Assembly (NCBI RefSeq): GCF_963853765.1
Contig: NC_088860.1
Span: 372,001 to 436,000 of the forward strand
Length of the DNA: 64,000 nt
Direction: 5' to 3'
DNA from: Magallana gigas
Taxonomy: Eukaryota
Every line of letters begins with the position of its first letter. Positions within the stretch are counted from its first letter, which is position 1. The position numbers were made by a program, and so were the translations under genes. Below, in pieces: positions 51,656 through 56,281 of this stretch. The notes under the pieces are model-generated. The model did not search any database and was not told the DNA's origin. It saw nothing but the letters and a program-made list of their open reading frames with translations.

Positions 51656-54191
51656 CGTGATAATAACAAGTACTAGCTTTCCAAAAAGCTTGCCTGACTA
51701 AACAAAATTATTCAATGGAAGCATCCATGTATCAATAAGGCTATCTTATTAGAAATAAATTTATATTCGCTGATGATCATAAATTTATAAACGGAACGTG
51801 CAAATTTAAGACGAAATGTCAGTCTTTTCTTCGATCTAGAACATGTACATATATATCACTTGAAATTCAGTTATTTTATAAATTCAATTATTTTTAGGAA
51901 TGTACAGTACACATATCATATAAGTGCATGTAAGCTTGAAAGCTGGAGAGTAAATAGTCGGGTTTTTTTTTTAAATTATATGTGTTATACTAAGATGTAA
52001 AATCAACTGAAAGGCATTTTTAAAAAAATTTCCAACCATATGAAATATAAAAGGGTATACAAACACGTATTGTTTTTTAATGTGTGTGGGCAGCTTCATC
52101 AAAATCATCTTGACAAGCAATTAAAAAAGGGTGAATTCTCAAATTCATGAAAAAAACCTAACTGTAACTTCAATTCAATTAGAATTCCTTATTTGCAGTT
52201 TTATTTATTGCATGCTCCTACAAAAGTGGAGGTTGGGGGGGGGGCAAATCCATGATATTTCCATTTATCATATAAAGTTAAGAAAAGTGCCAGCTGCCAA
52301 AAAAGTGGGGAGGGGGAAGCAGCCCCCCTCACTCCAACCCCTGATGATACGTGCCTGTGATGTAAACACATTGTGTGCTCTGGGGTATTCGCATGATCCA
52401 AGCGCACTCGTCAACTAATAGGTGCGCAAAATTATGAATGAGACATTATGGCGCGAAATCCTACTATTACCGTTCACGCAACGAATGAACTCATCCATTG
52501 GCAGAAGATCCATGGGGAGGGGGTCAGATGAATTTTTTGACATTTGTTTTGTAACAGCTAAATACATGTATATTATACTTTGGATCGGATGTTTTGGAAG
52601 AAATCTAACGAATTAAGACACACACTTGATTAGTTATTGTTAAATGTAGTAATGTACATTTAAGTAAGACACGCGAGTTATGACCCCTTTTCAAGATTAA
52701 TGAAATCGCCAACTGAACGAAAATCGGGTCACACCCTGCTTCGGCGATTTAGTTCCTCCTGTAAACATTCCAGCTGTATAAATATATCTTTGTTTTAATC
52801 CAAACTGATGACTCTCTTGTAATTATGATAATCCAACACCAATTATAACTTACATTGTACCGTTATAGACAATATGTTACAACTTGATGACCCCCTCCCC
52901 CTTTTTCACCGTTTAAATATAGTGGAATGCTGATCTATTTTTAAATCAGGATTACACACGTGCACTGCATGGTGAACGTCCCTTTTACTTGAAAACTCTT
53001 GCTCGCTGTTGTTATTACATGCCATATAACATTTTCATCAATTGTGAATGTAAATGCTGACATCCTAAACATAAATTGGTTAATCTTTTTTGTGAAATAT
53101 CATGATATTGCTTGTCCCATTGTCTGCACTGTTTCGGAGAATGCAATTTTTAAACCTTAGATATGCCTGACGTCATGACGTCAGGCAATCAACGGTATTT
53201 ATATATATAAAACGTAGATATATACGACTGACATCAAGCAATTAAAATTATTAATTTTTCCAAAAACACTTCATTATTGACGGTAATTTTAAAGTTAAAG
53301 TTTCTTATAAACTTCAACAAATTGATTGAACATTTTTCAAAGAAATTCTACATGAGAATCACAAAAACGCTTTTTTAAATGACGCTTGATAAAGAATGTA
53401 CAAGAAAAAAAATTCAATGAGATTTCGTCTGCTAAACATTTCGAGTTTTCTCGGTAAGGCCAAACGTCTCTCATTTCTTGAAAAGAACATAAACCTTTGT
53501 TGACGTTTTATTGTACAACTACTTGTTGATTAAATAAACAATCAAATTAATTGATTAATTTGAAAAAACAAAACAAACGCTTGCTTTTCCGGTGATTATT
53601 TTTAGGGACTTGTCAACACTCGAACGGCACAGCTACTTATAGCAAAGTACGTCAGTATATTCAACAGTCAGCATGATAATAACAATAGTGTTGTGTTGTG
53701 CAGTACATGCACAACACAACACTATTATATAAATAGTACTATTTCAAACTTGCATAGTTGATTTAACTATAATATACATCAAATGCAGAGGTACCTTCAG
53801 ATGCAGAGCCTGATCTCCATTATCAAGGATGCTAAAAAAATCTCCTACCTCACTCAAACCTGCTTGAAAGATGTGTTTGTTGTTAAATGATATAACATGA
53901 TTCCTATGATAGAGTTTGGTATGATATGATACACTATTGTTTTATATGATACATGTTATATCTGACATATATTAAATTGTAAAAAGTTACATGATATGAT
54001 ATGAAAATGTATTATACATTATGATACAATATTGTATAATATAAAATTGTATTACATATTATTTTATCACATGATATCACATGATATTGTTTCATATAAT
54101 ATTGTAATATATCTCATGAAATTGTATTATATGATATTGTAATATAAAATGTTGTATCATATGATACAATATTTCATAATATGAAATTGTG

Positions 54192-54194
<3 letters not shown>

Positions 54195-54273
<79 letters not shown>
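54195..54273. repeat. (TA)n microsatellite within a degenerate atatgatac/atattgtat AT-rich repeat (about 53900-54770)
   Basis: Direct reading. Confidence 0.93.
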
Positions 54274-54279
<6 letters not shown>

Positions 54280-54323
54280 GTTTTCAGTAGACGATAACAC
54301 AATAATCCATTTCTTTCAAATTT

Positions 54324-54363
54324 AATCCAGAGCGCTTTCGCCTGATCGGCTCTTCAGTGGATT
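54324..54363 (-). ncRNA. Minimal type I hammerhead ribozyme (minus-strand copy)
   Basis: Exact reverse complement of 54408-54447. Confidence 0.85.
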
Positions 54364-54407
54364 TCAAATTATAACAGAAATATTGTTAGATTTCTGTTAT
54401 AATTTGA

Positions 54408-54447
54408 AATCCACTGAAGAGCCGATCAGGCGAAAGCGCTCTGGATT
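54408..54447 (+). ncRNA. Minimal type I hammerhead ribozyme (plus-strand copy)
   Basis: AAUCCA-CUGAAGA-GCC(GAUCA)GGC-GAAA-GCGC-UC-UGGAUU: 6-bp stem I, CUGANGA box, 3-bp stem II, GAAA box, palindromic stem III, predicted cleavage after C54441. Confidence 0.85.
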
Positions 54448-54934
54448 AAATTTGAAAGAAATGGATTATTGTGTTATCGTCTACTGAAAACATTTTTCTA
54501 TATCGTTACCTATACCAAGGACTTATTCGTTTATATATATATATATATATATATATTATTTTATGATATGATACAATATCATACTATATTATACAATATA
54601 GTATGATATGTTACAATATTGGGATGTATAATGTGATTATATGCTATTGTATCTTACAATACAATATTGTATTATATATTATTTTTTGATATTGTATTAT
54701 GTGATCAAATACAATAATTTATAACATGATACAAAGTCATATCATATGTTGGTTTGATTTTCATATAATATGATAAAGGTGGTCTCATAAAGGTGATGCC
54801 GCGTCTCGGTGCGCTTTGTAATCTGTGATTACCTATGTTTTGGATTTCTTACCGACTTGGCTTGAAGTAGTCACAGATGGTTTATTTTACATTTCTCTGT
54901 TTAAAGAAGTGAAAGGAAAAAGAACGGTATTATT

Positions 54935-55265
54935 ATCTCACCTGAGTTGAAAGCTGAAGTGAGTTTTTCTGATTTCATCTTGTCCGTCGTCCGTCTGTAA
55001 ACTTTTCACATTTTGAACTTCTTCTTTAAAACTACTTGGCCAATTTCAACCAAATTTGGCACAAACCATCCCTATCGAGAGGTGAATATAGAAATGAAAA
55101 GGCCGGTGTTAATTAATAGTGAAGAAATCCTTGAAACCATAGAAAAGGGGACGCGTTTTAAAGAATCTTCTTCTTGGGAACAATGGAGTCTAATTCAGCG
55201 TAATTTAGCATAAATCATCCTTATGGAAAGGAAAATATAAATTGCAAAATTGGGGGAGGCAGTAA
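54935..55265 (+). mobile_element. Helentron-like repeat (oyster Cg170/pearl-type architecture)
   Basis: tattatctcacctgag...gtgagtttttctgat...gtccgtcgtccgtctgtaaacttttcac...ccaatttcaaccaaatttggcaca, the typical sub-TIR, GTCC microsatellite and core arrangement. Confidence 0.6.
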
Positions 55266-56281
55266 TCAGTTTATAACATCGGTATTCCATGTCTCGAAAA
55301 CGAGGTTCTTTTTGATAGGACACAGATCACAATTATTTTCCCCTCATTCCTTTATACAACATAAATAATATAAGAAATATCATCGGCTCAAATCAATTCA
55401 AATACAGCATATTTATGGGATGACATGACACTAGTCCAACAACATATCCAAACTGCAGGAAAATCAATCGAGAGGGGACTGAAATATGGCCCCTAAAATA
55501 TCCCCTACCATGAAAAATCCACTTTCACATTGGAATATGTGTAAATATTGGCCTCTTTACGCCCTTTATATCGGGCCTTTAAAGAGTTTTTCTGGTTGTA
55601 AAGAGGACACCAATGGACCCCCTTCATATTTTTCGAGATTTTTAAATCTTCTAAACAAGTGTGTAGCTGTGCAGTTCGACAACTGTTATAAGAGATTAGA
55701 AAGGCACTGTCCTGTTCTTGTATGCATAATTTGCGTACACAACAACATGTAGAATCTCATATTTATTGCTTATATATCTTTTGGCAACAGTTTTGGGCAG
55801 AAAGAAGCCAGTTTAAGATATGTTTACATTCTTATCCTCAAATGTACAAGATGGCCGCACAACCCCTTAAGTCTAAGCGTGAGTCTAAGTGTGAGGCGAC
55901 CTTTCTACAAGGCAAAGACCGCCATGTGTACAAAACACCCCAATCCACAATAATCTACAACATTGTCACTTTCAACATGACCAAGGAGCCATCAAGCCAA
56001 CTGGGGACGATGATTGCCTTTTTAATTCCGTTTCAACGCTGTTGGTTGGAGACCAATTCTTTCCCTCCTTGGCCACAGGGCTTCAGTATAAATCGTGCAT
56101 GGAGATGTTTCTGAACAAAAAACATCCAGCTGCACAAGGACAGGCTGGTTATGGATGTCTCTCGCCAACATATAAAGTGTGCCTGGCCAAGACAATATTC
56201 ATGTGTTTGGACCATACTTGCACTATCCAACATAATCAACGTGCCCATGGAAATACTATAATCCATGCGTTAATGGTACAG

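What the first reader, a model, noticed from the sequence alone, without database searches (positions are those of the whole stretch)
54274..54497. Two hammerhead ribozymes fused head-to-head in a perfect 108-bp palindrome
Seen in sequence: each arm holds an intact minimal type I hammerhead (stem I AAUCCA/UGGAUU, CUGAAGA, stem II GCC/GGC, GAAA, GCGC, UC cleavage site). The arms are exact reverse complements around an 8-nt loop, embedded in (TA)n. Established: such minimal hammerheads with a palindromic stem III mark Penelope-like retroelements and retrozymes and are thought to work as dimers; PLEs often leave inverted truncated segments. Inference: a transcript from either strand contains one sense and one antisense ribozyme, so it must choose between a 108-bp dsRNA hairpin (siRNA or ADAR substrate, ribozyme silenced) and ribozyme folding. 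No same-polarity partner exists in cis, so cleavage would need a trans dimer. Zero mismatches between arms imply a very recent event or gene conversion. The right arm has 33 extra nt before its TA tail that the left arm lacks.
Basis: partly seen in the sequence, partly recalled or inferred. Interest (0 to 1): 0.88.

Follow-up and report, generated by a model that had tools for sequence, protein, structure and literature searches.

The report
Inverted Penelope retroelement ends with hammerheads
The perfect palindrome is real, but it is the shortest form of a well-described insertion scar: two truncated 3' ends of one young Penelope-like retrotransposon, each carrying the element's own small hammerhead ribozyme, joined head-to-head inside a (TA)n microsatellite of an oyster genome.

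Summary
Observation confirmed. The arms 54274-54381 and 54390-54497 are exact reverse complements. Each holds a complete minimal type I hammerhead core, with the cut predicted after C54441.

Interpretation partly supported. The arms are the last 115 and 148 nt of a 4.15-kb Penelope-like element (PLE). It encodes RT plus a C-terminal GIY-YIG nuclease with Neptune-type motifs. The hammerhead-bearing 48-mer occurs 79 times in this 564-Mb oyster genome.

Among neighbouring copies there are 15 head-to-head pairs, 0 tail-to-tail and 2 tandem. The hammerheads of a pair lie 67 bp to 3.7 kb apart; the window is one of the shortest. The two arms of a pair share private variants, so each pair is one integration event. 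All 12 inspected pairs have one tailed and one untailed end, both fused to (TA)n.

The hammerhead is conserved with compensatory changes in six related PLEs. Its stem III is always palindromic, the dimer-type motif already described for PLEs.

Zero mismatches reflect a short arm and a young family, not gene conversion. At this locus the -184 kcal/mol hairpin should silence the ribozyme. dsRNA or siRNA output is untested.

This is a known kind and of low interest. The pair census does give some constraints on PLE integration. First readers of this scan noted similar palindromes elsewhere in this genome.

The parts
54193..54274 (.). (TA)41 microsatellite, left part of the insertion target
   Evidence: TRF; sequence
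54268..54382 (-). Left arm: the last 115 nt of a 5'-truncated PLE copy (unit 4013-4127). It ends at the internal TATAT site (X1) without the tail and merges into (TA)n.
   Evidence: BLAST to the full-length unit; alignment of copies
54324..54363 (-). Hammerhead motif of the left arm, sense on the - strand. Predicted cut is after C54330 (- strand).
   Evidence: Mirror image of the right-arm motif
54382..54389 (.). Centre of the palindrome, the junction of the two 5'-truncated ends. The two arms abut at 54382/54383. The right arm carries a 2-nt indel against the family sequence (TTGTTA-GA-TTTCTG).
54383..54530 (+). Right arm: the last 148 nt of a 5'-truncated PLE copy (unit 4009-4154), with the full 3' end (X2)
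54408..54447 (+). Minimal type I hammerhead: stem I AAUCCA/UGGAUU, CUGAAGA, stem II GCC/GGC, GAAA, the palindrome A-GCGC-U, C17. Cut predicted between 54441 and 54442.
   Evidence: Rfam Hammerhead_1 at 16.8 bits over the full model; covariation; dimer cofold
54498..54530 (+). One-sided PLE tail (CTATATCGTTACCTATACCAAGGACTTATTCGT), present on only one arm of every inspected pair
   Evidence: described as a 30-40 bp tail in PMC8557442
54532..54556 (.). (TA)12.5, right part of the insertion target

Best explanation
The palindrome is the product of a single integration of a young, (TA)n-targeting Penelope-like retroelement (PLE). The element encodes RT plus a C-terminal GIY-YIG endonuclease and has Neptune-type motifs. 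Integration left two extremely 5'-truncated copies of the element's 3' end joined head-to-head.

The hammerhead in each arm is the PLE's own conserved, dimer-type minimal type I ribozyme. It lies in the 3' UTR/pLTR region, about 220-260 nt after the ORF stop.

Shown: what the arms are, the copy census, the orientation bias, variants shared between the arms of a pair, the one-sided tail, the (TA)n target, and covariation of the hammerhead.

Inferred, step 1: both cDNAs were primed from the two 3'-OH ends of a break in (TA)n. One annealed at an internal UAUAU (X1) and the other at the terminal UAUAU (X2) of the same RNA. Both were copied toward the same 5' end and then joined.

Inferred, step 2: at this locus the ribozymes are non-functional cargo. 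Any read-through transcript would zip into a 108-bp hairpin from the loop outward as the second arm emerges. A lone sense copy also lacks the same-polarity partner needed to build helix III.
For: The arm is multi-copy and many copies are 100% identical.

At other loci the two arms flank inverted ORFs that each carry RVT_1 and GIY-YIG. [quoted passage not shown] Relatives at 55-68% identity occur in Saccostrea, Pinctada and Mytilus.

The window arms map to unit 4013-4127 (-) and 4009-4154 (+).

Of 79 hammerhead copies, neighbours form 15 head-to-head pairs, 0 tail-to-tail and 2 tandem.

The arms of a pair share variants found in no other copy: L033 has 4, L034 has 3, L031 has 1.

12 of 12 inspected pairs have one X1 end and one X2 end.

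Inner ends are correlated: 5 of 15 pairs differ by <=16 nt, shuffle P = 3e-4.

A Saccostrea echinata locus shows the same head-to-head arrangement, one-sided tail and (TA)n.

Hammerhead structure across six PLE relatives: 94.7% of cells paired, 10 of 13 pairs with compensatory change, 0 of 500 shuffles as good. The helix III loop is always palindromic: GCGC, ACGU or GUAC.

Folding energies: dimer cofold -26.9 against 2 x -10.5 kcal/mol for monomers; the full hairpin is -184.3 kcal/mol.

Literature: inverted 5'-truncated copies, pLTRs, the 30-40 bp one-sided tail and microsatellite targeting are described in PMC8557442. Minimal dimeric PLE hammerheads, and pairs of them on opposite strands 100-700 bp apart, are described in PMC4209133.
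Against: Rfam Hammerhead_1 is below its gathering score (16.8 against 34).

No read or contig bridges the centre of this particular locus, so its exact junction rests on the assembly alone.

Clade assignment as Neptune-like rests on motifs only; no phylogeny was built.

The model of two primers on one RNA is inference. It does not by itself explain pairs with very unequal arms, such as L032 at 141 against 2437 nt.

Self-cleavage of this ribozyme has never been assayed. PLE minimal hammerheads cleave poorly in vitro (PMC4209133).
Confidence: 0.9

Rival explanations
1. Two independent insertions of the same PLE family into one (TA)n tract that happen to face each other.
For: (TA)n is a strong target, so repeated hits on one tract are conceivable.
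Against: The orientation bias is 15 head-to-head to 0 tail-to-tail. The arms abut directly with 0-10 nt between them. The arms share private variants. The ends are always one X1 and one X2 (12 of 12). Inner ends are correlated.
Confidence: 0.02
2. Assembly fold-back artefact: only one arm exists in the real chromosome.
For: No contig from four public runs bridges the centre. Palindromes are a known artefact of some long-read libraries.
Against: The same architecture recurs at 15 loci with different junctions and spacers, including pairs with kilobases of coding sequence between the ends. It also occurs in an independent assembly of another oyster genus. It matches the published PLE anatomy. 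The two outer ends differ (tail against no tail), which a simple fold-back of one arm would not produce.
Confidence: 0.03
3. A hairpin-RNA locus. The palindrome is transcribed and its 108-bp dsRNA stem is diced into siRNAs, or edited, so that it acts in trans against the PLE family.
For: The predicted stem is very stable at -184.3 kcal/mol. RNA libraries contain a few reads on both strands of the arm sequence. Inverted transposon copies are classical hpRNA sources (background knowledge).
Against: The arm reads cannot be assigned to this locus because there are about 70-79 near-identical copies. No RNA read crosses the unique centre. No promoter or host gene context was established. No small-RNA data were examined. 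This would be a by-product of the scar, not an alternative origin.
Confidence: 0.1
4. A non-autonomous palindromic element, MITE-like or retrozyme-like, that itself amplifies as a unit.
For: There are several short palindromes of about 220-270 bp flanked by TA: the window, C2:17330786, C9:19159862 and C6:18451947.
Against: Each has a different centre: unit 4009/4013, 4023/4023, 4025/4025 and 4020. They are therefore independent events, not copies of a master. There is no same-polarity tandem as retrozymes require. The arms are plain PLE 3' ends with an asymmetric tail, unlike true terminal inverted repeats.
Confidence: 0.03

Closest known systems
Inverted 5'-truncated copy / pLTR insertion structure of endonuclease-positive Penelope-like elements (Evgen'ev and Arkhipova 2005; Craig et al. 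2021, PMC8557442)
   Same: RT plus C-terminal GIY-YIG ORF. Heavy 5' truncation. Partial tandems. An inverted truncated copy abutting the element. A tail of about 30 bp at one end only. Microsatellite (TA)n target. Hammerhead in the terminal repeat region.
   Different: Here both copies are truncated to about 115-150 nt, so nothing but the two 3' ends remains. In this family the two inner ends are often nearly equal. The tailed and untailed ends map to two defined TATAT sites 27 nt apart.
Minimal / small-helix-III type I hammerheads of metazoan PLEs (Cervera and de la Pena 2014, PMC4209133)
   Same: Type I topology. Intact CUGANGA...GAAA...UH core. G10.1-C11.1 pair. Helix III reduced to A15.1-U16.1 plus a 4-nt palindromic loop, implying an active dimer. 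Location in PLE terminal repeats. That paper already noted pairs on opposite strands 100-700 bp apart.
   Different: Helix I is 6 bp and helix II is 3 bp, closer to canonical-like metazoan hammerheads than to the Schistosoma min-HHR (7-8 bp helix II, extra nucleotide before 10.1). Activity is untested.
Animal non-LTR retrozymes (Cervera and de la Pena 2020, PMC7229834; Li et al. 2026 preprint 10.64898/2026.07.22.740005)
   Same: The same class of type I hammerhead with a palindromic helix III. Proposed to derive from PLE pLTRs.
   Different: Retrozymes are same-polarity tandem repeats that yield circular RNAs. This locus has two opposite-polarity copies and no tandem.
L1 twin-priming inversions (background knowledge)
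   Same: Two cDNA syntheses primed from both sides of one target break, then joined internally.
   Different: L1 twin priming inverts a different, more 5' segment of one RNA. Here both arms are the same 3' terminal sequence, primed at two sites 27 nt apart.

Membership tests
Hammerhead ribozyme, type I (Rfam RF00163) | Conserved core CUGANGA ... GAAA ... U-H cleavage site in type I order | tested here: met
   CUGAAGA, GAAA and UC are all present. The full-length model alignment covers positions 1-45 (sequence).
Hammerhead ribozyme, type I (Rfam RF00163) | Score at or above the curated gathering threshold (34 bits) | tested here: not met
   16.8 bits, E 0.049 on a single arm. No hit at gathering threshold in the window. 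The deficit is in stem III.
Hammerhead ribozyme, type I (Rfam RF00163) | Helices I and II supported by covariation | tested here: met
   Six PLE relatives: all 6 helix I pairs and 2 of 4 helix II pairs show compensatory change. 94.7% of cells are paired against <=41% with slid partners. 0 of 500 shuffles did as well.
Hammerhead ribozyme, type I (Rfam RF00163) | Self-cleavage at the predicted site | not testable with these tools
   Needs an in vitro or in vivo assay.
PLE-type dimeric hammerhead (PMC4209133) | Helix III of 1-2 bp capped by a 2-4 nt palindromic loop | tested here: met
   A-GCGC-U here; A-ACGU-U, A-GUAC-U and A-GCGC-U in relatives. All are 6-nt palindromes. Cofold predicts a 6-bp intermolecular helix III.
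PLE-type dimeric hammerhead (PMC4209133) | Located in the terminal repeat of an RT/GIY-YIG element | tested here: met
   Downstream of the ORF, and repeated upstream in tandem copies (L037, L038, L039).
PLE-type dimeric hammerhead (PMC4209133) | A same-polarity partner nearby, so that a dimer can form in cis | tested here: not met
   At this locus the only other copy has opposite polarity. There is no further PLE sequence in the 64-kb window.
Penelope-like element, endonuclease-positive, Neptune-type | Single polypeptide with RT followed by a C-terminal GIY-YIG endonuclease | tested here: met
   RVT_1 at 244-443 and GIY-YIG at 669-756 of the 757-aa ORF.
Penelope-like element, endonuclease-positive, Neptune-type | DKG motif, CX2-5CxxC linker, and cysteines within the GIY-YIG core (CCHH) | tested here: met
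   By inspection of the translation: QADKGG, CEDSRCGTC, IIYCMTCNGCGENYIGQT ... H ... H. Criteria from PMC8557442.
Penelope-like element, endonuclease-positive, Neptune-type | pLTR partial tandems, inverted 5'-truncated copies, one-sided 30-40 bp tail | tested here: met
   2 tandem pairs and 15 inverted pairs. A tail of 27-33 nt sits on one arm in 12 of 12 pairs.
Penelope-like element, endonuclease-positive, Neptune-type | Phylogenetic placement of the RT within the Neptune clade | not tested
The assignment rests on motifs only.
Animal non-LTR retrozyme | Same-polarity tandem repeats of a non-coding unit, each carrying a hammerhead | tested here: not met
   The two copies are inverted and there is no direct repeat of the arm at this locus.
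MITE / DNA transposon with terminal inverted repeats | Symmetric terminal inverted repeats bounding a unit that moves as DNA, with a fixed target-site duplication | tested here: not met
   The arms are 3' ends of a retroelement. The outer ends are asymmetric (tail on one side). In longer pairs the interior is two inverted RT ORFs.
microRNA precursor families (Rfam MIR5512, mir-3938 and others) | Score at or above the gathering threshold | tested here: not met
   82.7 against 139 bits, 56.1 against 94 bits and so on. The hits fall on both strands alike, so they are generic long-hairpin matches.

The most novel reading that the evidence does not exclude
This young oyster PLE family records the integration mechanism. 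Every head-to-head pair has one end primed at an internal UAUAU (no tail) and one at the terminal UAUAU 27 nt downstream (tail). The arms share template-specific variants, and their inner ends often coincide within 0-16 nt. That pattern would follow if two cDNAs are primed in tandem on one and the same RNA molecule from the two sides of a (TA)n break and both run to the same RNA 5' end. It would explain the so far unexplained one-sided tail and the inverted repeats of PLEs.
Probability: 0.3. Interest if true: 0.55.

Novelty: new member of a known kind. Interest (0 to 1): 0.27.

Why it matters
For the genome scan, this explains a class of eye-catching "double hammerhead palindromes" that first readers flagged repeatedly in this genome. 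They are ordinary Penelope-like-element insertion scars, not a new ribozyme architecture.

For transposon biology, the family is young and low-copy enough to be useful: 79 hammerhead copies and 15 head-to-head pairs. Its pairs give clean constraints on the still unknown PLE integration pathway: one event, one template, two defined priming sites, and correlated truncation points. The covariation also gives independent support that the dimer-type hammerhead is under selection in bivalve PLEs.

Tried and rejected
- The Rfam gathering scan of the window found nothing. The E-value scan of the whole palindrome returned only sub-threshold miRNA-hairpin models on both strands. I rejected these as generic hairpin matches.
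- I considered a DNA transposon or MITE with terminal inverted repeats, because of the TA flanks and the variable spacer. This was rejected once the spacers proved to be inverted RT/GIY-YIG ORFs.
- I considered snap-back (hairpin-primed) second-strand synthesis as the origin of the inverted pair. Geometrically it only makes a hairpin-capped single copy. It also predicts that the tailed arm is always the longer one, which fails in L031, L035, L036 and L010.
- The Hydra PLE clade, which targets (TA)n, was rejected. This ORF has DKG, CCHH-type cysteines and a CX4CxxC linker, not DKT or CxCX5C, and the element is over 4 kb.
I did not try another route, so the pair statistics rest on the 38 loci already held.
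- Read laying on two DNA and two RNA runs showed no record bridging the palindrome centre and no locus-specific RNA evidence. The flanks are high-copy repeats, and the "empty-site"-like joints (54172 to 54658) have sides of only 21 nt, so they are not interpretable.
- Earlier scan notes by words returned nothing. By genome they returned similar palindromes elsewhere.
- A per-column majority base was computed inside one script solely to classify variants as private or shared. It was neither printed nor stored.

Full report
1. The observation.

Arms 54274-54381 and 54390-54497 are exact reverse complements (108 bp) around the 8-nt centre 54382-54389. The first mismatch is 54273/54498.

Each arm reads AAUCCA CUGAAGA GCC-GAUCA-GGC GAAA GCGC UC UGGAUU, sense on + at 54408-47 and sense on - at 54324-63. 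That is a type I hammerhead with an intact core, C17 at 54441, and a stem III reduced to A15.1-U16.1 around the palindromic loop GCGC.

The flanks are (TA)41 and (TA)12.5. The right arm continues for 33 nt (54498-54530) before its TA run.

Rfam gives no hit at gathering threshold. On the whole palindrome only sub-threshold miRNA-hairpin models match, on both strands alike. On a single arm, Hammerhead_1 aligns end to end at 16.8 bits against a gathering score of 34 (E 0.049). The loss is entirely in stem III.

2. What the arms are.

The window is C8:372001-436000 of a 564-Mb, 29-contig genome. Sequencing runs that hold the stretch are labelled oyster.

The arm is multi-copy and many copies are 100% identical. 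At other loci the same two arms, in the same mutual orientation, are separated by 223 bp up to 3.5 kb.

In L031 the spacer consists of two inverted ORFs, each with RVT_1 and GIY-YIG. A full-length tandem copy (L037) gives a 4154-bp unit with a 757-aa ORF. [quoted passage not shown] These are the features PMC8557442 gives for Neptune/Nematis-type endonuclease-positive Penelope-like elements. Homologues at 55-68% identity are in Saccostrea, Pinctada and Mytilus.

The window's left arm is unit 4013-4127 (-) and its right arm is unit 4009-4154 (+). The two abut at 54382/54383. No other PLE sequence lies in the window.

3. A systematic product of integration.

The 48-mer covering the hammerhead occurs 79 times at <=3 mismatches, 35 of them exact, against 0 for the reversed control. 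Neighbouring copies within 10 kb form 15 head-to-head pairs, 0 tail-to-tail pairs and 2 tandem pairs.

The hammerheads of a pair lie 67 bp to 3.7 kb apart. The window, at 98 bp, is one of four short palindromes. The centres of those four differ, so they are independent events rather than copies of a master.

The arms of a pair share variants seen in no other copy: L033 has 4, L034 has 3, L031 has 1. They have also diverged from each other since formation (L031 11/1853, L033 4/1521, L025 5/105). So each pair comes from one event and one template, and there is no sign of later homogenisation. Zero mismatches in 108 bp is therefore unremarkable.

In 12 of 12 inspected pairs, one arm ends at ...CATTTTTCTATA fused to (TA)n (X1). 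The other continues through CGTTACCTATACCAAGGACTTATTCGTTT to a second TATAT fused to (TA)n (X2). In full-length copies this tail simply continues into the element's 5' region. It is the one-sided tail of 30-40 bp described for PLEs.

A Saccostrea echinata locus shows the same head-to-head arrangement, the same homologous one-sided tail and the same (TA)n target.

Inner ends of the two arms are correlated. 5 of 15 pairs differ by <=16 nt, including arms of 1.85 kb. A shuffle gives P = 3e-4. Either arm can be the longer one. For L016, L022 and L037 the outer-end type of the second arm was not in the fetched DNA and is assumed.

4. The ribozyme.

Hammerheads of the same design sit 3' of the ORF, and also 5' of it in tandem copies, in five related elements. 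One of these is a second family in this genome (L035:872-922). The others are metagenomic relatives at 47-68% protein identity and a Saccostrea echinata element.

On their alignment 94.7% of cells pair. 10 of 13 pairs show compensatory change. No shuffle of 500 reaches this, and slid partners give <=41%. All six stem I pairs covary. The stem III hexamer is always a palindrome (AGCGCU, AACGUU, AGUACU), and H17 is C, U or A.

This fits the dimer-type PLE hammerheads of PMC4209133. That paper also reports low activity in vitro and notes dual motifs on opposite strands 100-700 bp apart.

RNAcofold predicts a dimer with a 6-bp intermolecular helix III at -26.9 kcal/mol, against 2 x -10.5 for monomers. 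The full 224-nt palindrome folds at -184.3 kcal/mol.

5. How it most likely works.

Shown: this is a single-event PLE scar in (TA)n, carrying the element's conserved ribozyme twice in opposite polarity.

Inferred, on origin: two target-primed cDNAs started from the two 3'-OH ends of a break in (TA)n. One annealed at X1 and one at X2, most simply on the same RNA. That would explain the obligatory X1/X2 asymmetry, the shared variants and the frequent coincidence of inner ends. The cDNA ends were then joined.

Inferred, on activity: the ribozymes here are inert. There is no same-polarity partner in cis. In any read-through transcript, the second arm pairs with the first from the loop outward as it emerges.

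Whether the locus is transcribed or yields small RNAs is unknown. RNA reads on the arm sequence cannot be assigned among about 70-79 copies, and none crosses the centre. DNA contig depth on the arms is about 70 times the single-copy depth, which agrees with the census.

6. Comparison and novelty.

Every element of the finding is described for PLEs: inverted truncated copies, the one-sided tail, the microsatellite target and the palindromic-helix-III hammerhead (PMC8557442, PMC4209133). The retrozyme, MITE, miRNA and independent-insertion readings fail defined tests (see Membership tests and the rival explanations). An assembly artefact is unlikely but is not excluded at read level for this locus.

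First readers of this scan noted at least five similar hammerhead palindromes elsewhere in this genome.

What may be new is quantitative: the strict X1/X2 rule, the shared private variants and the correlated truncation points in one young family. These bear on the unsolved PLE integration mechanism.

7. Verdict.

This is a known kind of feature. Interest is 0.27.

Noticed in passing
L037:2582-2948 (- strand; unit 3582-3948): A 367-bp insert with terminal inverted repeats of about 16 bp (GGGYGCTTTCCATTTA) sits in the 3' UTR of one full-length PLE copy. It is absent from all other copies. A second copy of it lies near another PLE in L019:1766-2133. It is probably a MITE.
   Followed up: partly
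L037:5401-6630 (-) and relatives L039:235-1410, L042:1-1266, L045:652-1785, L046:502-1710: This PLE lineage has a conserved upstream ORF of about 375-420 aa with no Pfam match. It overlaps or abuts the RT ORF. In this unit and in L040, L042 and L046 the RT ORF is in the -1 frame. Canonical PLEs are described as single-ORF elements.
   Followed up: partly
L017:1500-1840 (G000:C6:18451875-18452214): A zig-zag of four alternating arm segments with two identical centres (AACTTGGTT) and an inner turn at the AGCGCU hexamer next to the cleavage site. It lies between (TA)n and (TATC)n and looks like a rearranged or re-duplicated palindrome.
   Followed up: partly
unit 4009-4025 (window 54383-54399 and equivalents in L001, L002, L011, L017, L025, L026, L027): The 5' truncation points of at least nine loci cluster within 17 nt. 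The cluster lies just downstream of a GC-rich palindromic hairpin, TGACGTCATAATAACGACGTCA (CRE-like TGACGTCA). This could be an RT stop, an RNA 5' end or a transcription start.
   Followed up: no
proteins P0014, P0022, P0030, P0047, P0082: PLE RT/GIY-YIG proteins at 48-55% identity are filed under bacterial symbionts of bivalves (Solemya velum gill symbiont, Candidatus Thiodiazotropha endolucinida). They are most likely host retroelement contigs mis-binned into symbiont assemblies.
   Followed up: no
window 53744-53891, 54780-54853, 55002-55075, 55224-55297: Short segments flanking the locus have summed contig depths of 40,000-160,000 against about 15-20 for single-copy DNA. In one poly(A) RNA run their reads are strongly strand-biased. 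They are very high-copy repeats, perhaps SINEs or MITEs.
   Followed up: no
window 53990-54190 and 54557-54760: The AT-rich DNA on both sides of the TA tracts is built of 10-, 15- and 35-bp units rich in short palindromes (TACAATATTGTA, ATCATATGAT). It gives about 70-75% self-complementarity around the same centre. This is a low-complexity effect, not an extension of the PLE palindrome.
   Followed up: partly
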